Shown here piece by piece: positions 2,943 through 63,721 of a DNA stretch of 64,000 nucleotides. The stretch lies in assembly GCA_051294905.1 (NCBI GenBank), contig CM119382.1:3286001-3350000 (forward strand), read 5' to 3'. Made by a program: the position numbers and the translations under genes. A model generated the notes under the pieces. The model had not been told where the DNA came from. It ran no database searches and was given only the letters and a program-made list of their open reading frames with translations. How positions within the stretch are numbered: position 1 is the stretch's first letter; each line of letters starts with the position of its first letter. The stretch comes from Botryllus schlosseri (taxonomy: Eukaryota).

Positions 2943-4383
2943 AGCAACGCTAACTACTTCGGACCCCGCTGATTTCTGCATACTTTGCTGTACGCAACCT
3001 ACACTGACAACGGATCTGGAAGCTGAACCGTCTGACCCGATCAACACTCCTTCGAAAGAAATGACATTGTATTCAAGGAAATGGCGATAAATAGTAGTTG
3101 GAAAAGTGCAATGAAGTAGTATATGCTAAAATCTTACGACATACCAGTCTGTATCGATAAAATAATCGGAATCATAACGTCTAAAAGAATCATAGATTTT
3201 CAAGGGTGGTCTATGACATGGATGCTTCAGTATGACTTCTATATTAGTTTCATTACCATAGCCCGGTTGCTATAGTTAGAGTTGCAATGACTGGGAAGTA
3301 TTTAAAACTTAACAACAGCAGTCTGCGGACAAACAGAAAACATGAGTTGACATATACATGAAGAGCTTCTTGGAGGTACAGAACTTCAATATACAATTGG
3401 ATAGGATATTCATATTGAAATAAGCCCGAACAATTTCAAAATTCATGTGATACGATTGTTGATATACAATGTACTTACCAAATTTTTACTAGTTGCTGGC
3501 GATTACCCATGAATATATGGGGTTGTTTCAATATGGATATACCATCCAATTACATATACATGAGCATGCGACATACAGCATGCGACCATTGAGCATGAGC
3601 ATGTGTGTTAAAGCTAAGGTTAGGGTGTCATGTGGTCAAAGTATAGTCATCGCTGGTACTTGAGTAAGTAACGTCTTGACATTCTACTCAAGTACACGTA
3701 GAAGCGGCGATTTTCGAGTACGTTAAAAAGTAGGTGTACTAAACAAAAAGTTTTAGCAGAAATAGTCTAAAATCATATCCACCCGAGTAAGTAGCGATAC
3801 GGGTCGGGCTGGGGTTCGGGCATGGATCAATTTTGGGGTTAGTAAGAGTTGGACAAGTATAAGATTTTCAGCTTTTTCCAAATAAGTCTAGAATTAGAAT
3901 TATAGCAACAGGTTTCTTCAAATTATATTAAAATTATAATTACCGATTTCGTAAAAATTTAGAATTCGAATTAAGTTCGGAATTGCAAAGATGGAAACCA
4001 AGAATGTATTTGTTTTCGTATCAAACCAGAGACCGTTCTCATAAGCATGATCATGACAAAAGTCTGTACACCAAGCTCGCCTCGATTTGCACTATACAGA
4101 TCTACTGTACCATTTTAAGAGAAATCGGAAATTATAATTAGAATGAAAATTACAACATAGAAACATTTCACAAATGTGATTAGAATTTGATTACCGGCAT
4201 TTCGCTTTAATTAAGAATTATGTATTTGTCCAAGTTAAGATCGGGGATAGGCTTGGTTTTGGGGTTATAAAGTCACACGCTCAAGTGTCGCATGCTCAAA
4301 TGTCGGACAACGAACAACACACACGCGAAACGGGATGAAACAGAAAATAATCACAATGCATAGAAATCAGCAACGCTTTTGGG

Positions 4384-5507
4384 TCACAACCCGGTGACGG
4401 ATCTCTGCATGTTATGAAATCGCGGACATTGCGGCCGTGGTGAAAATTCGTGAGGGGTGTAAAAATCGTACGAATTGCTTCTGCGTATGCTCCTAGACCG
4501 CGGATGGGGCGCGGGAACGTTGGTCGGGGGCGTAGGGGGCATGTAAGGAGGGTGTCCTAAAGTGTCGTGGCGCGAATTAGCACACCCATCAGATTCCGTG
4601 ATCATTTCGACTTCCAAATCGTTTTCATCTATTTTACAATTGTGACGTATAAATTGACGCTTTACGTCATCGCAACGCGGCTTTCTGCATATAGGCTCTT
4701 CGTAGTGTGAGCTATTTGCGCCTGAAAGCTGTTTACTGGCAGACGAGCAACCGCTGCTGACACTACAATCTGTCACGATAGGGTCATCAGAATCGCTGCT
4801 TAGCGATTTTCTTTTGGGGTTACCCCTATTTGGGGTAAACACAGGCTTGGGTTGGAATCTGGGACGATTCGGGGACTGTTTTGGGGGTGACATTCGGTAA
4901 CTAGCCGACGAAGAAATACGCTGTTTTGGAGCGCTGTCCAGGGATAGTCTGTGAGGGTGGTCGGACCTGATTGTACCAGGACGCGGTGGTTGGCCTGATC
5001 TAGTCGAATCAAAGTTAAGGACATTGTCCATAGATCGTCTTGATAAAGAAGGGTGGCGCTGTAAACCTATGCCTGAATCTCGTTTTGTGTTGAAATTTTC
5101 GTCTAAACTTCTCCGAAAAGAGCGTGAATTTTGCCCCCTGGCCCAACTAGCCCGGGTCGGGTTGTTGTTGATGACGTCGTCAGTGTTGCGAGTAAAACTA
5201 CGTGTGTCACTTTTCGGAGTGCCGGGAAACTCTCCTTGTATGACCCTCCCGAATTGGTCTCTTTGCGGTACTTTGCCTGTCCCGAAATCACCCAACGCCC
5301 TGGCCTGCCCTGGAAAGATTAAGTAATCGTCCGGGTGGTAGTGGTGTTGGAGGTGGTCGTATTTTTCGGTTTCTCTGGTCCTGCTGATTATTACGTTGCT
5401 TCTGGCGTTGTGGTTTGGCGGGGGTAGGAAGACCTCGTCTTCGTGAAGATAATTTCTGTCGACTGGGTAAGGAGGCCGGTTGAGGGGCACGAGGCTGGTG
5501 GTAGGTT
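4384..5507 (-). CDS. ADGRL: Gene 1 terminal exon: long S/R/P-rich cytoplasmic tail ending RSVTGL*
   Basis: Longest ORF in the window (368 aa); tttcag acceptor at 5508-5509; G+AA junction with exon 7837 is in frame; class I PDZ-type C-terminus. Confidence 0.9.
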
Positions 5508-8500
5508 CTGAAACGTGAATAAGAATATTTTAAAATCATCGATTTTTTGCGGTTTTTGAACAAAAAAAATCAGCCAATAAAAGGCTAATATGCGTGAAGA
5601 TAAACTGCAATTTGAACGCAAAAGTGATCAGTAAACGCTTGGGAGTCGGAGAATTTCAACTTTTTGGAACAACCTTTTGCTTACTTGCGGTACTAACTCG
5701 AGAGTTCATGTTTCCAGACTAATTCCACTTCTACTTGAAACGTCTTTAGCCCGCAAGGCTTACTTTTTGCGCTTCGTATTTTTAAAAGTTAAAACCCTTT
5801 TAAGGACAAGTTTCTCAAAGTATTCAGGTTTTGACTTCTTGTACTATGTATTCAATCGATTGTGTGTTTGAAGGGCTAGGCTACCCCTCAAAATAGAATC
5901 TCAGTGATACACCCATACCTTACAAACTAACGACGGAATCTTTTTGAAATTTGGACACAAGGTGCTTTCAAACGTTGTTGAAAATTTGGAGAAAAATGGC
6001 AGACGGTTTTTTTACTTTCGTTGGATTTTATGATTTTTCAAAGTAATTTTATGCTAACTTTTTTCTGGCAGAACTCTTCAGTTAAATTTTGTGTTGGTGC
6101 TCTTTGTAGATTATAAGTACCCCCAAGTTCTGGATGAAAGGCTTTTATTGTCCCAACAAGTGTTATTTTGAGGAAATATATAATTCTTTTTACAAAATTC
6201 CAAAATTGGCAAATTTTTGACTTGGATGAACCTAAAGGAGAGACCCCTTACTTATAAAACATAAACCATTTCATTTGGCGAATAGTCCCAACATACTCCA
6301 ACCTCCAACCTTCACGTTAATTGGACGATTTTTTCTGCCTCTAAAATGATTCATAACTTTCAAGGTACGAAAAAATAGAATTTTGATATTTTAGACCATT
6401 TGTAGTCATTTTGCGTTAGCTGCGGGGATGCGCTTTGCAATTTCGGAAACAGAAACCTCAGATTAACTGCATAAAGTATGCGACACCTAGAGTAAATCTA
6501 AATTTTGAAGCTACTCCCTTGAGGACTTTTCAGGCCGTATATATGTTCTAGTTTAGACACGACTTGGAAGTTGCTATACTTCTACTAAGATATTCATGGA
6601 GACATTTCTACTCCCACTCTGCTAACATACACGCGTCAAGAGAAATTGCAACTTAAACAAAAATCCATCACATGTGAACCTGTTAAATACGAAAATAATC
6701 AGCAACGCAAAAAGGCCATGCACATGATCGCATTTCAGGAGCTATAAACAAACTCAGCGTGGACAGAAAGTGCTTCACCACTCTCAATATCGTGCAGTGT
6801 ATAATCATGAATGCTTCTTAACGCAAACCAACGGGCGTGACATGACTCTTACACGTACAGGAGCTCTTTTTGGAAGTCAAAGTTTCGGAGCGCTGGACAT
6901 TGCGAGACAGCGTGGTTACCGGGCTGCGTTCGTAGTAAACGGCCCGCGTCAGCGTGGACGTGGGGCTGACCTCGTAGTATATGTGGCGAGACATGGTAGA
7001 CGGGGGACTCCATTCGTATCCTTGCAAGAAACCGTGATTTATGTGACTGGCCAAGTTTTGAGCAAACGACACAATTAGACACGATTGAGGGCGTGGGTTT
7101 ACAATCGCAAAACTAACCCAAATTTCAAACCAAACCCAGATATTAGCCCGTACCCATACCACCACCCTAATCTAACTCCTTCCTTTAACCCACATGCTCA
7201 TTGCTCAATTGCAGCATGTCCAAGTGTCGCATGATCTTATCTCGCATGCCCATATGTCGAGACTGGAATTAGAATTATAGCCGCGCATTTATTTCAAATC
7301 TGTTTAGAGTTTGAATTATTGAATTCGCGAAAACGTGGAAATTGAATTAAGTTCATTTCGTATGAAATCAGAATTCAATCTCGTAAGCACGAGAGTGGCA
7401 ATTGTCTGTGCAGCAAACTTGACTCGTTTCGCACTATACAGTTCTTCTCCTGTAGCATTTTCAGGGAAACCAAAAATTATATTAGAATTAGAGCAAAGAA
7501 CCTTTTAATGAATTAGATTCGATTTATTATCTAATTGTACAAGTCTGCTTGACAGCAACCTTCAAGTACTGTACCACCAATCAGTTAATTTTATCAGATA
7601 GCACACCGGGTGTATATTTATCGTCATAGCCTACTGCCTGACACCGGGAAGGTACATAGCTAATCTGGATGTGAGAAACCGGTAATGGCTTTGTATCGCA
7701 CCCTAAACGTGATAACGCCAGACATCAAGCCTGTAGTAATGAAGACAAGTGTATCTGTCATTCAATCATTTCGCCGCTGATGTTAAGGCTATAGTTTCGC
7801 TGCTTAGAAAGAAAAAATCGTGAAGCAGAAGTTTACCTCCGTTGCGTTCTGCATTGGCGAATTCATCGGAATTCCTCGGCGCTACAGTCTCGCTCCACAT
7901 ACGCCGCAGCTGACTTTGCTGAAACATAACATGATATTCTATAGACAACGGTATGTTTGACAACAATTAAACCTTGTTTCAGTCGAATATATGTCCGTAT
8001 AGACAAGCATAGCCATCGCATTACCACGTGAATAGTTTTCAGCAACTTTCTTGTAAGTGTGCGAGCATTTATAATTTTTCTAGTTTGCCAAAAGCCATAA
8101 AAGTTTGGGAGCCATCGGTACAGTGCGAAACGAACCAAGCTCGGTGTAAAGACATTTGCCATTCTCGTGCTGATGAGAATGATACGAAATTGGTATGACA
8201 TGAACTTGATGTCATTCGATTGCGATTTCCAAGTTTTTGCGAATTCAGCAATTCTAATTCTAATCGAATTTATAAAAGTCGAAAAATTTCAACTTTTCCA
8301 ACTTTGCTTTCTCTACGATTCATACCTGAAGCGATGCGTTGGTGGTGATGCCGGATCCGACCGGATATCGTCCCGGAGTGAATTTCTTCGAAAAGGAGGA
8401 GCTGTTGGACAGGTACGAGCCGTGGCCCAGGCTTTCGCAGCACGGCAAACGGCTAAAAAATCGCCGGTATTCCTTGCGGACCTGCGTGGGATGATGGTGG

Positions 8501-11500
8501 ATTTATTGTTTTCTGAAATCTATACAAGCGGTATACAATCTATACAGCGTTACGTCAACCGCGCTTCCTGACTCCTGAATAATGCATAAAGTGAGTATTG
8601 CGGAGACACACGGCCAGCCATAAACCATCAAAATGGGTTCAATCGTGGCCAAACATACCATAGAGCAGGGATACTCAACTGTCTTTGATCAAAGGTTCAT
8701 ATCATGGATGTAATGACTCGAGTCGTGATTTTTCGGTGACTCCACTTGACTATTTAGGAAAATGACTATACTTGAGTCAATTCGTGTATTGACACGACTT
8801 ACACTCGAATCATTGCGCATGACCCGACCAGGTCATGTGACTCGAATCTCGGACACCCGACACAGGCACAAGGTTGTGAGTCCCAACTACCAAGTCCATC
8901 TTGTTGTTTTAGATTCACCGCGAGTCAAGTCGAGTCATTTTCAATTCATCCCCGAGTCATGACCGAGTTCAAGTCGAGGTTCTAAGGGTTGAATCCGAGT
9001 CATAGTGTTGGGACTCGAGTGCGAGTCCAAGTCATTGTGTTCACAATTCAGTTTTTAGAGTTCAATTCATGTTCAACCCACTGTTTTAGAACTCTGCTTG
9101 GGTCATATCGAATGCCTCGCATTCCGAATATACTAATGATCCTCATTCTTAGCAGTTTCTGGTCATAATATTCGTGAGCGAGTACTGATGGGCTATAGAC
9201 GAAAACCCAATAATGTGGAGCTTTATACTCTTCTTCGAAGTTACAATGAAATGCCTGTCTCGGGCATCCGAGTCCGGATCTGTGTACAATTCGAGTCAAT
9301 ACACGAATTTTCAGTATTACATGAGGATGGGAAATGTCTGTTCATGAGCTTGCCGCCCTTTCTCTCCAATTAGACTCATCAGACAACTTGAATTTTCAAG
9401 TCATGTCGAGTCACCCACAAATTGCGACTCGAGTCGGATTCAAGTCGAGTCACTACGGCCCTGGGTATGGCTTGTTCGATGCGCCTACCTTTCTCGGCAA
9501 GATGCAGTGAAAAATGTAGATGAACATCCCTTGGAACGCATTGAAGATGCAGAAGAGATACGCCAGGATGGCTGTGTTTTCGTTGATCCACACGATGCCG
9601 ATCCCCCACGTAATGCCCAGCAGGAAAAGCAATACCGATGCCCCGCGTACGGACGCTCTGCAAGTCGAGATGGTCGGTAACAAACTACATCAAAAAATCA
9701 CGAAGCACTCGAGTAGATTTTGCTTGCTTTAACAGCTTACAAATCGTTTTGTGTGTTTGTAATTCATCTTCTACGTTAAGATATTTTCAGGCAAAACTAT
9801 GGGCCCTCCTTTAGTATGCGTCCCATAACAAACTAATGTTCCCCATTAAACCAATAAATGTTTCCCACGAAAGCCACACCCAAATATATAAACGTCAAAA
9901 TCTGTAGTGTTTCGGGCTGGGGGTTTGAGATATTATGGTTGTGGTGACTGATATTAGGATTGGGGGATGACGGATGAGGGAGGGACGATAGGGTTAGATT
10001 TGGGTTTATGGATATTATCCCTCGCTCCTAACCCTCATTTCGCCAACCCAAACGCCATCCCGCAACCCTAGGGTTACCATATTTTGAGATCCGAAAAAAA
10101 GACACTTTATACAAGTTACAAAGCACATAAAAACGGATTTTGACAGAAAATATTTTCGGGTTGGCTAGAAAAAAGGTCATTTTTCCTATGTTGACCTTTT
10201 TTTAGTAAACCTTGCTCTCACTGCCGTCAAAACCAATATTTCGCGTCATTTATTCCGTATTTTAGATGTTCGTGTACCATAGCCTGCCCCTAGAAACTAT
10301 AAATGAGGATATTTGGGTTTCCTCTGAGGACATTTTCGATTTCTTGCAAAATGAGGACAAATCCTGCTAAAGGAGGAAGTATAATAACCCTACGGAATAT
10401 CCGTCATCACCACAATCCTAGTATTAGTCATTTGGCATCGTTTGCATGTAAATTGATTACAACAATTCGCAAAGTACTCTACCTCGTAAAACACACGCAT
10501 TCACTCACTTGACTGAATTGATTTTACTGACATCAGCAAAAGCGAGGGAGTGGACGTACATCTTGTAAACGGCTATCGACAGAAAAGCCAAGTTTGCGAG
10601 GATGATGGCTAGCACGGGACCCACGAAGCTCCAGATGAATCCGGTATCTATCCGGAGCCAGCATGCGTCTTCGGTGCCGTATCCGGTGGGCTCCGAGGCC
10701 ACTGATATCCCGACGACCAGGGCTGGTATACCTGCGATATTGGATTGATGTCATCAGTATATGGATTGGAAGAGAGTGACAATTTACTGCGTTTAAACAA
10801 CCTTTAGCCGAGTAGCAATGCCGACTACGTGATTACCTCTATCTAATAATAGTATATAAGAGCTAGGTTCATACCCAACACCACTTACCATATCCGCACA
10901 GATAATACCACTTCCATCTCGACTCGGCCTCAAACACTTCCACCAGCATCACGTACAGCATGAAGCCTTCCACCGCCATCCACAGAAACGCGGCCAGAAA
11001 GAAGTAATGCAAAACCCCGGCTATCACGGAACACGCCAGTTCGTTTTGTGTCTGTCCGATGCCGAACAAAAACAAGGTCTCGGCGACCAGCAGACAGACG
11101 CACAGGTGCTTGTGGACTGAGGTGCGGTCGCTGTGGAGGTTTCTGGAAACGGGGATGCGTGTTTACGTTGTTTAGTTGCAAACATGGGCGTGGGAATTTC
11201 TGTATTCTAGCTGCACAAGTTTATACTGTACCATGTACGCTTGGGCTGTTCAAGGTTTTACTGGCTACATCATAAAATTTTTGGCTTGCCTAAAAAAAAC
11301 TCTTCATACCAATTTTTTCGCTCAACTCCAACTTATATGATGAAAACGTTGTGGATTTATTTAATAAAAATAAATATAAAATATTATCAAATTTTACTGG
11401 CTCCTCCATAAAATTGTTAAGGTTTTCTGAAAAAACGATGCACAACGAATTCGGCTCAATTCCAACCAGTAGAAGCGAAGTTATTGGAGTACTAAATTTG

Positions 11501-20500: not shown

Positions 20501-23500
20501 TTTTTAGGCAACCTAACAATTTTATCCGTAAGTGAAATCTGTACGATATCTATAGGCTGATTTACGCATCACGCAGCACTTGTAAATCAATACGCAAATG
20601 GACTCGTCCACGCGTCCCTTCCGCTGCGATTTTACGCGCACGAGTTGATTTGGAATTCGCGCGGCGATAACGGACTGTTCAAGCTGTCACGGTCATGCAG
20701 CAGAAGGTTTAGTGCTGTCTGCACCCGGCGGAAGTCATATCGACAGTCGCTGGTCAGCGGACTTGCGGTAATGCTGCGTGAAATCAATGCGCTCAGATTT
20801 CACGACCTCAGAGGGCTTAGTCGTAAAGGTATTTATTTCAAGCTATTCGTTGACGGTTGTCCAATAGTCGTGATGGTAACAGACTATTATGACTACAGCG
20901 GCGGACATATAACTATAGTCAGGCACTATTTTTCCTAACTTAACACTGCGCAACGTGAAGTGTTTCAACTATAACTTTTCTATATTATTAACTGAATATA
21001 TCCACGATAATAGGTAGGCGGCCCAAGCATCTCTTTTCGACTAGTTGTAAAAAAACGTGAGAAATCGTAAAACTGATACGCAGGCGTAGGTATCGCACAA
21101 TATTGGAATCACTGACATCATTACATAAACTAATAGCAACGTTCGCACATCATGTCAAGTGTTTTGCACAGGGCGGCAAATTCCTCATTAGTGTAATTTC
21201 CCGAAAAACACCGCATTTTATACTATGATTACACAGTATGCATACCAATCAATCTAAAACGTTTCAATTAATTAGATGTACGGTCGCTACCGTGTGCACG
21301 AAAGGAAATCTTACTTGAACTCTCGTGAAATAACACGTCCCGGAACCAAAGTCGGTCAACAAGATAATTTTTATCTTTCTAAAATTACATTAGAACTAGA
21401 ATTACTCGGAATTCGCAAAGGCGCGGAAATTGAATTAAATTCAGAATTGTGAAGAACTACAGCAACAATCAAATTCAGATCATACCAAACCAGAGTTCAT
21501 TCTAATAAGAATCATAACGGCAAATATCTGCACCAGTCTTGAACAACTAAATAATTCCAGTTGTATTATTTGACTAATTAGAGCGAAATGCCGATAATCG
21601 AATTTGTGAAATATTTCTTAGCTGCAATTGTAATTCTAATATCATTTATGAAATGTTTCTACAGGAGAGCTGTAAAGTGCAGAGCGAGCCAAGCTAGCTG
21701 TACAGACATTTGCTATTCTCACGGTCAAAAGAATGATATTGACGAAACTTCATTCAATGTCCTAGTTTTCGGGAATTCAGTAATTCGAATCTATTTTTTT
21801 AATTATGATGTAATTTGAAAAAAAATGGGTAAATGCAAGTTGCTGTGATCATAGAAGCTGTAATTCTAATTCTAATCTAATTTCGATCCAAGTCTGCGCA
21901 CCGTTTCGCACTATTCAGTTCTATTGTACTATTTAAAAAAAATAGATTACAATTAAATTTAGAGCATAAAAACATCTCATAATTTAGATTACAGTTGAAT
22001 AACAATCAGAACCAAATTATCTACTAGTTCCCCCAGTTTTGTTTGGTTATTTTCTTGACCTAATCTCTAGTGGCGGGTCGCTTTTACGCTTAGCAATGCG
22101 ATGCTCATGAATCATCGGATAAATGCAGAATGCAGATGTTCTTCCAAATAATGATGCCGGTTGGCACAATCGATTTAAGAAACGTACAGGGAGATCTGTG
22201 TAAACCTGGATATAGGGTTGTTGGGCACACTGAATCATTGCACACACCTAAGAATATAACACTTACTGTATCTCACGCAGTTGAACTTGGTTTCCAGGTA
22301 TTTCATAGTTCCCGGGCATGGATCGGGAAATATATCGGACGACACTAGGAATGAGCATTCCGTTTCATTATCGCACCTGAAATTACAACAAAATTGTTCG
22401 TTTACATTGGATTTTGTAATTTATTAACTGTAAGGTCCTTCACCTAATATGTGTTACACGACGACAGAACGTAACTCAGAAGTATGTCGCAGTTATAAAT
22501 TATACGTGTGTACGTGCATAGTCTGCATACTTAGCATACCTTCCTGCGTCCCTAGGCGCCGGCATGTAAATTGTGTGTTTGATCTATAACGTGGTGTAAG
22601 TCTGAGATAGGTTCTGGTTTGGGGCATCACGGGTGTATATTCACAGTTCACGCCCGTATATCACGGGTGGCGCATGGATGTTAATACACACACAGTCTTT
22701 TCGAGGGAACTTATTTCCTGGTTGTACTGTGCCTGTAATTCTCCGTCATTTTCAAAGCAAGTTATACCACACCACAGACCGCAATCATATAATCCAGCCC
22801 GATGCTAAAACAAGGCTTAAAATATTGTCAAGATTTTATACCTTTCAGAAACAATGTCGTAAGCGCCCGCCAAGGCGCAGTTAGTGTTCTCAACCAGGTC
22901 AGACGAAGCGCTACATATGTCTTGAGATCGCCGGCCGTATTCAGCAGATACGATCTAAAATTTACGTTCGATAAATCTCGTCATTAAACTTGAACTGATG
23001 ATTGTATAATGTATATGCAGACCTGGATTACGTCTTGTCCGGGACATCTCATGTGTATCGGATACTTTTCGCATTCCGTCTCAGACCGTACCGGGAAACC
23101 GTTCATGGAATTCGGTTCCTCGTCTGGCCAACCCCACCCTGCCGCTGAAATTAAATTAAAAATTAATTTCGTCAATACCGTCGCCGTTTTCAAAGGCTTA
23201 AAAATCGCGGTCAACATTCCGTGTACGCACAGCCAAAGAATCGATGGTTCGTGTCGAAATTTACGATATAAAGCGTAGCACAATATCGCACGGAGTCTCT
23301 CCATACGTAACTTGATGGGTAAGTTATAATTTACGATAATTCGATCATAAATTATAGGCGTGCTGGCTGAATAATTCATGTCTTAACGTACGCAATTCAC
23401 AATACTCTGACGTGGCGAGTATTTTCATTATTATAACACAGGACGGTTGTGTCATCGCGATTACATAGTCGCATGTAATCTAGGGTAGCTTTGGCTGAAT

Positions 23501-56339: not shown

Positions 56340-63721
<7,382 letters not shown>

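What the first reader, a model, noticed from the sequence alone, without database searches (positions are those of the whole stretch)
6818..7020. Cassette exon that could switch latrophilin between a PDZ tail and a short tyrosine-repeat tail
A 168-nt exon between the RRMW exon and the terminal exon encodes three exact-period 14-aa repeats: [14 protein letters not shown] / [14 protein letters not shown] / [14 protein letters not shown]. This argues it is real coding sequence. Skipping it gives G+AA=Glu, in frame to the 1.1-kb PDZ-ending exon. Including it with the main acceptor (5507) gives T+AA=TAA exactly at the junction, removing ~370 aa and the PDZ ligand; that stop is at the last junction, so it should escape NMD. 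Reading through its donor ends at TAA 6818-6820. A second acceptor 45 nt into the last exon (cccag|TC at 5462) would restore the frame (T+TC=Phe). C-tail exon switching is known for vertebrate latrophilin-3, but this YExSP repeat module appears unrelated and lineage-specific (inference).
Basis: partly seen in the sequence, partly recalled or inferred. Interest (0 to 1): 0.75.

Follow-up and report, generated by a model that had tools for sequence, protein, structure and literature searches.

The report
Alternative last exon shortens latrophilin tail
In this sea-squirt latrophilin gene the flagged exon is real and is spliced in, but it acts as an alternative last exon with its own stop codon rather than a cassette, giving a short receptor tail without the conserved PDZ-binding end, much like a tail switch already known in vertebrate latrophilins.

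Summary
The sequence facts are confirmed. Minus-strand 7020-6853 is 168 nt, has AG/GT borders and encodes three 14-residue repeats. Skipping it gives Glu and the 373-residue tail ending VTGL. Joining 6853 to 5507 would make TAA.

RNA contigs change the interpretation. The skip junction 7837->5507 is present in three studies. The junction 7837->7020 is present in one (X1, depth 16.4 against 24.1 for the skip form). That contig runs unbroken through the proposed donor 6853, past the stop at 6818-6820, and ends at 6536. No junction from 6853 was listed. So this is an alternative 3'-terminal exon (7020 to about 6509), not a cassette.

The repeat is non-random. Its copies differ mainly at third codon positions, and its GC content matches the coding exons. 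However, a second allele differs at 7 of 202 bases (four changes non-synonymous), five times the density in the constitutive exons. No homologue was found, so present-day constraint on the peptide is doubtful.

The long tail and its TGL end are conserved in three related proteins. Alternative last exons with and without the PDZ motif are known in mouse latrophilins. I file this as a new member of a known kind, of moderate interest.

The parts
8326..8481 (-). Constitutive cytoplasmic-tail exon (52 codons, VRKEYRRFF...NASLQ)
   Evidence: Sequence. Junction 8326<-7918 at GT..AG in X1, X2 and X7.
7837..7918 (-). Constitutive 'RRMW' exon. It ends in phase 1 (a lone G) and is the branch point between the two tails.
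   Evidence: It is joined to 5507 in three studies and to 7020 in X1.
6509..7020 (-). Alternative 3'-terminal exon: acceptor at 7020, coding to the stop at 6820-6818, then about 300 nt of 3' UTR. Transcript contigs end at 6536 (X1) and 6509 (X7).
   Evidence: X1 contig of 511 nt (depth 16.4) covers 6536-7019 plus 26 letters of the exon ending at 7837. X7 contigs cover 6509-6815 and 6832-7062. Depth is about 0 in 5540-6463.
6896..7020 (-). Three 14-residue repeats, [G/Y]-Y-E-x-S-P-x-[S/T]-T-[L/M]-[S/T]-R-x-[I/V]. Units are 7020-6980 (plus the G of 7837), 6979-6938 and 6937-6896.
   Evidence: Fully conserved columns by codon position are 6, 10 and 2 of 14.
6847..6852 (-). No use of it was seen.
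   Evidence: Sequence. The X1 contig passes through it unbroken and no joint from 6853 was listed.
6818..6820 (-). Stop codon of the short-tail isoform. It is TAA in the reference and TGA in the allele seen in X1.
4384..5507 (-). Main last exon: 373 codons of long tail ending R-S-V-T-G-L plus the stop. The last four residues are encoded at 4398-4387.
   Evidence: Junction 5507<-7837 in X1, X2 and X7. Three related proteins are 80, 51 and 46% identical to it (BLASTP), and the T-G-L end is invariant in their alignment.

Best explanation
The stretch is the coding part of an alternative 3'-terminal exon of a latrophilin-type adhesion GPCR on the minus strand.

After the constitutive exon 7918-7837, the pre-mRNA takes one of two routes:
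1. It is spliced to 5507. This gives the long 373-residue tail whose conserved end, V-T-G-L, fits a class I PDZ ligand.
2. It is spliced to 7020 and then ends near 6500 without further splicing. This route adds 67 residues, including three Y-Y-E-x-S-P-x-S/T-T-L-S/T-R-x-V repeats, and stops at 6820-6818 in its own last exon, so it should escape nonsense-mediated decay.

Shown: both junctions, the unbroken read-through of the 6853 donor, and use that differs between samples.

Inferred: the main functional effect is loss of the long tail and its PDZ ligand, by analogy with mouse Lphn3 E31/E32. A further inference is that the Ser/Thr/Tyr-rich repeats act as a phosphorylation-dependent tail element. 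Each unit carries an S-x-x-S/T-x-x-S/T pattern like the PxxPxxP arrestin code.
For: Junctions and coverage:
- Joint 7837->5507, CT..AC on the plus strand, is present in X1 (depth 24.1), X2 (14.5) and X7 (7.05), which come from three studies.
- Joint 7837->7020 is present in X1 at depth 16.4.
- The X1 contig is continuous from 7019 to 6536 with no coverage upstream of 7020, so the acceptor edge is sharp.
- X7 also covers 6509-7062 at depth 5-7.5.
- The intron between 6463 and 5540 is essentially uncovered.

Coding character:
- The exon has 56.5% GC, like the neighbouring coding exons (56-57%) and unlike the introns (35-40%).
- Differences between the repeat units fall on third codon positions (p = 0.006-0.01).
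- The period-14 repeat was reached by none of 100,000 shuffles.
- In the diverged X1 allele the frame is intact and the stop is kept as TGA. All indels lie outside the ORF.

Gene identity and the long tail:
- The gene has SUEL lectin, OLF, GPS and 7tm_2 exons.
- The long tail and its TGL end are conserved in three related proteins.

Vertebrate precedent:
- All Lphn3 transcripts end in either E31 (with the PDZ-binding motif) or E32 (without it) (PMC10830413).
- LPHN2 tail splicing shifts the balance between G protein and arrestin-3 (PMC12236479).
Against: - The 7837->7020 junction was seen in one of three RNA data sets only, and in one contig with 26 letters on its short side.
- In X7 the only contig over the acceptor is unspliced (6832-7062).
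- There is no canonical AAUAAA near 6500-6560 in the reference. The nearest AATAAA is at 6149.
- No raw reads covered the gene (X23), so there is no poly(A) tail, no strand information from reads and no true quantification.
- The second allele differs at 7 of 202 ORF positions. Four changes are non-synonymous (Y>C and T>P at conserved repeat positions, K>R, G>V) and two are synonymous.
- That density is five-fold above constitutive coding sequence (p = 0.002) and not different from the adjacent UTR, which suggests weak present-day constraint on the peptide.
- No homologue was found in three protein searches.
Confidence: 0.7

Rival explanations
1. One reading: a 168-nt cassette exon whose donor at 6853 is spliced to 5507, creating TAA across the last junction, or to 5462, which would restore the frame.
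For: The site after 6853 is a good 5' splice site (GTAAGA). The exon length is a multiple of three, and the junction arithmetic is correct. Contigs drop rare variants, and five weaker joints were not displayed.
Against: No joint from 6853 was listed in three RNA data sets. The X1 contig runs through 6853 without a branch at depth 16.4, and the stretch 6852-6536 is covered at the same depth as the exon.
Confidence: 0.1
2. The same molecules exist but are biologically neutral. On this view a cryptic acceptor and a weak intronic 3'-end site give a by-product transcript. The repeat is an old exonised minisatellite, and the peptide has no selected function.
For: - Allele differences in the ORF look near-neutral: 4 non-synonymous to 2 synonymous, at a density like the UTR.
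- Two of the changes hit conserved repeat positions.
- No homologue was found.
- The exon is absent from X2 and unspliced in X7.
- A 14-nt satellite can mimic a similar 14-residue periodic peptide (P0004).
Against: - The third-codon-position pattern of divergence between repeat units is that of a frame maintained as coding.
- The GC content is exon-like.
- The exon accounts for about 40% of junction depth in X1.
- The frame is intact and the stop retained in a diverged allele.
- Whatever the peptide does, loss of a conserved 373-residue tail must change the receptor.
Confidence: 0.3
3. The covered block 6509-7062 belongs mainly to a separate transcript that starts inside the intron, for example from the repeat at 7234-7541, and is joined to the receptor mRNA only occasionally.
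For: The X7 contig 6832-7062 crosses the acceptor unspliced. There is low depth in 7080-7233 and a highly expressed interspersed repeat just upstream.
Against: In X1 coverage stops exactly at 7020 and continues into exon 7918-7837 at canonical GT..AG. The frame carried in from the receptor is the open, repeat-encoding one.
Confidence: 0.1

Closest known systems
Mouse Lphn3 (Adgrl3) alternative 3'-terminal exons E31 and E32, with equivalent sites in Lphn1 and Lphn2 (PMC10830413)
   Same: After a constitutive exon, each transcript ends in one of two terminal exons. One tail carries the PDZ-binding motif and the other lacks it. Use differs between samples.
   Different: - The sequences are unrelated.
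- Here the tail without the PDZ motif lies upstream of the tail with it, and it is very short (67 residues) with a 3 x 14-residue repeat.
- There are no functional data on G-protein coupling or scaffold binding for this gene.
- Common origin versus convergence was not tested.
LPHN2 C-tail splice variants that set the bias between G protein and arrestin-3 (PMC12236479)
   Same: Tail composition is changed by splicing. The short tail here is rich in Ser/Thr, with S-x-x-S/T-x-x-S/T patterns.
   Different: Arrestin or GRK involvement here is inferred from the pattern alone. No experiment or homology supports it.
Skipped or composite terminal exons with intronic polyadenylation, such as the immunoglobulin mu secreted/membrane choice (from my own knowledge, not checked here)
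   Same: An unused 5' splice site lies inside a terminal exon, and the choice between splicing onward and ending the transcript decides the C-terminus.
   Different: Here the exon has its own acceptor. Onward splicing from it was not seen, and no poly(A) signal or tail was shown.

Membership tests
Latrophilin (ADGRL) type adhesion GPCR | N-terminal rhamnose-binding (SUEL) lectin domain | tested here: met
   PF02140 matches in exons at 22238-22420 (E 9e-8) and 22820-22954 (E 3e-4, 21.4 bits, below Pfam's 31.4-bit cut-off).
Latrophilin (ADGRL) type adhesion GPCR | Olfactomedin domain | tested here: met
   PF02191 in three exons between 17250 and 20120, E 3e-14 to 2e-8.
Latrophilin (ADGRL) type adhesion GPCR | Hormone-receptor (HRM) domain | tested here: inconclusive
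   No Pfam hit at E <= 0.01 in the open stretches tried. The exons were scanned piecewise and not all of them were scanned.
Latrophilin (ADGRL) type adhesion GPCR | GPS motif followed by a secretin-type 7TM domain | tested here: met
   PF01825 (E 2e-13) and PF00002 across exons 11914-9453.
Class I PDZ ligand at the C-terminus (X-S/T-X-hydrophobic-COOH) | Thr at position -2, hydrophobic last residue, free C-terminus | tested here: met
   The long tail ends V-T-G-L followed by the stop. T-G-L is invariant in three related proteins. Binding to a PDZ domain cannot be tested with these tools.
Cassette (internal, skipped) exon | Both the acceptor and the donor are used in mature mRNA | tested here: not met
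   The acceptor at 7020 is used (X1). The donor at 6853 was not seen used, and the contig reads through it. Contig data cannot exclude rare use.
Alternative 3'-terminal exon | Own acceptor joined to an upstream constitutive exon, an in-exon stop codon, and a transcript that ends without further splicing | tested here: met
   Joint 7837->7020. Stop at 6820-6818. Contigs end at 6536 and 6509, with about zero depth down to 5540.
Alternative 3'-terminal exon | Poly(A) signal and poly(A) tail at the end | tested here: inconclusive
   There is no AATAAA or ATTAAA between 6817 and 6276 in the reference; the first AATAAA is at 6149. No raw reads covered the gene.
Arrestin phosphorylation code (PxxPxxP / PxPxxP) | Three phosphorylatable residues with that spacing which are actually phosphorylated | not testable with these tools
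   The pattern S-x-x-S/T-x-x-S/T occurs once in each repeat unit. The spacing is as described in PMC7913897. Phosphorylation is unknown.

The most novel reading that the evidence does not exclude
The 3 x 14-residue Y-Y-E-x-S-P-x-S/T-T-L-S/T-R-x-V module would be a selected, phosphorylation-dependent docking array for arrestin, an SH2 domain or a Pro-directed kinase. It would give an ascidian latrophilin a signalling tail free of the PDZ motif. The latent 5' splice site at 6853 would make the exon a regulated composite exon. Tail switching with and without the PDZ motif would then predate vertebrates, or have arisen twice.
Probability: 0.15. Interest if true: 0.55.

Novelty: new member of a known kind. 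Interest (0 to 1): 0.35.

Why it matters
Vertebrate latrophilins choose between a scaffold-binding tail and a tail without the PDZ motif by picking a last exon, and that choice controls synapse formation. An RNA-supported equivalent in a tunicate would place this logic in the closest invertebrate relatives of vertebrates. Tunicates have small nervous systems in which isoform-specific knock-outs are feasible. It also corrects the gene model: the short isoform ends at 6818-6820, not at a junction stop codon.

Tried and rejected
- Homologues of the 66-residue tail. Word-indexed searches were blank for 36-115 and 63-201 residue proteins. These searches cannot see full-length receptors.
- Exhaustive HMMER search of 1.84 billion representatives. 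It gave four hits, all translated tandem repeats unrelated to receptors. The best-looking hit, P0004, is a 14-nt DNA satellite read in three frames, so I rejected it as a homologue.
- Own-genome search. It found only the exon itself; the next hit, L002, is a low-complexity repeat.
- Pfam on the tail exons: nothing.
- BLASTP of the short tail against the long tail and against the neighbouring paralogue's tail: no similarity.
- Raw-read RNA run X23 did not cover the gene.
- Contigs behind the related long-tail proteins are too short (1.5-1.7 kb) to reach an upstream alternative exon. Two of them could not be fetched.
- Single-sequence AlphaFold gave mean pLDDT 57 with a tentative hairpin over residues 9-31, too weak to use.
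- I could not check whether the isoform is already in a public annotation, because no stop-free query is long enough to reach full-length proteins.

Full report
**Observation**

The gene lies on the minus strand. Its last constitutive exons are 8481-8326 and 7918-7837. The second of these ends with a lone G before GTAAAC.

The flagged exon follows the AG at 7022-7021 and spans 7020-6853 (168 nt). It is followed by GTAAGAG. In the frame carried over from the upstream exon it reads three 14-residue units, (G)[27 protein letters not shown] and [14 protein letters not shown]. Fourteen more residues follow. If the donor is read through, eleven further residues come before TAA at 6820-6818.

The last exon starts at 5507 and encodes 373 residues ending SVTGL.

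The period-14 self-similarity is 17 identities. None of 100,000 shuffles reached that at any offset. There is no detectable DNA-level tandem repeat, and the exon is single-copy in its 495-Mb genome.

**Gene identity**

Pfam finds the following in minus-strand exons between 22954 and 9453:
- SUEL/rhamnose-binding lectin
- olfactomedin
- GPS
- secretin-type 7TM

This is the lectin-olfactomedin-GPS-7TM architecture of chordate latrophilins, which has been reported for tunicates (PMC6422961). I did not verify that. A second, paralogous receptor gene lies at 56340-63721.

**RNA evidence**

Four runs were laid on 4000-8600.

- **Raw reads.** The one raw-read run (X23) did not cover the gene.
- **Contig sets.** Three contig sets from three studies (X1, X2, X7) are RNA-derived, because they carry intron-less junctions at GT..AG.
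- **Constitutive and skip junctions.** All three sets carry 8326<-7918 and 7837->5507, the skip form, at depths 24.1, 14.5 and 7.05.
- **Junction into the flagged exon.** X1 also carries 7837->7020 at depth 16.4.
- **Shape of that contig.** It is 511 nt long and covers 7019 down to 6536 without a break. It passes straight through the proposed donor at 6853 and the stop at 6820-6818. X1 has no coverage just upstream of 7020 and essentially none between 6463 and 5540.
- **X7.** X7 covers 6509-6815 and 6832-7062 at depth 5-7.5. Its contig crosses the acceptor unspliced, and its skip-form contig shows no branch.
- **X2.** X2 lacks the exon altogether.
- **Donor 6853.** No junction from 6853 was listed.

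The exon is therefore used as an alternative 3'-terminal exon of about 510 nt, with about 300 nt of 3' UTR. It is not used as a cassette. In X1 it accounts for roughly 40% of the junction depth.

Limits of this evidence:
- Contigs do not show rare forms, strand or poly(A).
- Five weaker joints were not displayed.
- The reference has no canonical AAUAAA near the contig ends.

**Is it coding?**

For:
- The exon has 56.5% GC, like its coding neighbours (56-57%). The introns and the UTR-like part have 35-40%.
- Among the three repeat units, the fully conserved columns number 6, 10 and 2 of 14 at codon positions 1, 2 and 3 (p = 0.006-0.01). That is the signature of divergence under protein-level constraint in this frame.
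- The diverged allele in X1 and X7 keeps the frame open. It changes the stop only from TAA to TGA, and all its indels lie outside the ORF.

Against:
- That allele differs at 7 of 202 ORF positions.
- Four changes are non-synonymous: Y>C at the conserved Tyr of unit 2, T>P at the conserved Ser/Thr position of unit 3, K>R and G>V. Two are synonymous.
- The constitutive coding exons show 9 differences in 1364 nt. Six of these are listed by position, and five of the six are synonymous.
- The density in the alternative ORF is five-fold higher than in the constitutive exons (p = 0.002). It is not distinguishable from the adjacent UTR.

Present-day constraint on the peptide therefore looks weak. The numbers are small.

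**Relatives**

The short tail has no detectable homologue.
- Two word-indexed searches were blank.
- The exhaustive search returned only translated tandem repeats. One of them is a 14-nt satellite that mimics a 14-residue period.
- None of these searches could see a full-length receptor isoform or a related ascidian genome, so neither 'lineage-specific' nor 'unannotated' is established.

The long tail is clearly conserved.
- Three proteins from public run assemblies are 80, 51 and 46% identical to it by BLASTP, and their T-G-L end is invariant in the alignment.
- One genomic contig keeps the cag|AACC acceptor.
- The two tails are unrelated to each other and to the paralogue's tail.

**Mechanism**

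Shown: a choice after exon 7918-7837 between two last exons.

Inferred: the short isoform loses 373 conserved residues and the class I PDZ ligand. It would therefore lose scaffold anchoring, as in mouse Lphn3. There, every transcript ends in E31 (with the PDZ-binding motif, recruiting SHANK/PSD95 condensates) or in E32 (without it, with different G-protein coupling) (PMC10830413).

The repeats are Tyr/Ser/Thr/Pro-rich. Each unit carries S-x-x-S/T-x-x-S/T, the spacing of the PxxPxxP arrestin code (PMC7913897). LPHN2 tail splicing is reported to tune arrestin-3 against G protein (PMC12236479). This last step is a pattern match only.

A single-sequence structure model was of low confidence.

**Verdict**

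The tail switch is real, but it is made by an alternative last exon with its own stop codon. It is a new member of a known kind, of moderate interest. Function of the repeat peptide is doubtful.

Noticed in passing
window 57259-59223 (minus strand): The neighbouring paralogous receptor has the same 3' layout: a 51-codon exon at 59464-59312, an exon at 59222-59124 that also ends in phase 1 with a lone G, and a last exon starting near 57258. Its equivalent intron holds a GC-rich 95-codon open frame at 58242-58529. That frame is unrelated in sequence to the repeat exon, and its expression was not tested.
   Followed up: partly
window 60080-61600: A tandem array of units of roughly 150-160 nt that look tRNA-derived (SINE-like) fills an intron of the paralogue. 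The plus-strand ORFs at 60323-60646 and 61071-61319 are translations of it.
   Followed up: no
window 4154-4307, 7388-7541, 8158-8311: Interspersed repeat copies lie in the 3' UTR and in introns. They show very high depth in all RNA runs (up to about 1,300 in X7) and chimeric joints between copies. They include a direct pair 4002-4106 / 7344-7448 and an inverted pair 7375-7439 / 8118-8182.
   Followed up: partly
window 8700-9450 and 57760-57990: Both paralogues carry, in their introns, an element full of GACTCGAGTC-type short motifs. It is followed by a shared stretch (...CATTTCATTGTAACTTCGAAGAA...), so it is probably a mobile element.
   Followed up: no
L006 1328-1568 (protein P0004): A metagenome ORF with a 14-residue period, S-Y-G-x-S-P-T-G-T-L-x-R-x-L, resembles the exon's repeat (49% identity over 39 residues). 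It is the three-frame translation of a 14-nt DNA satellite. This is a warning that such periodic peptides can arise from simple DNA.
   Followed up: yes
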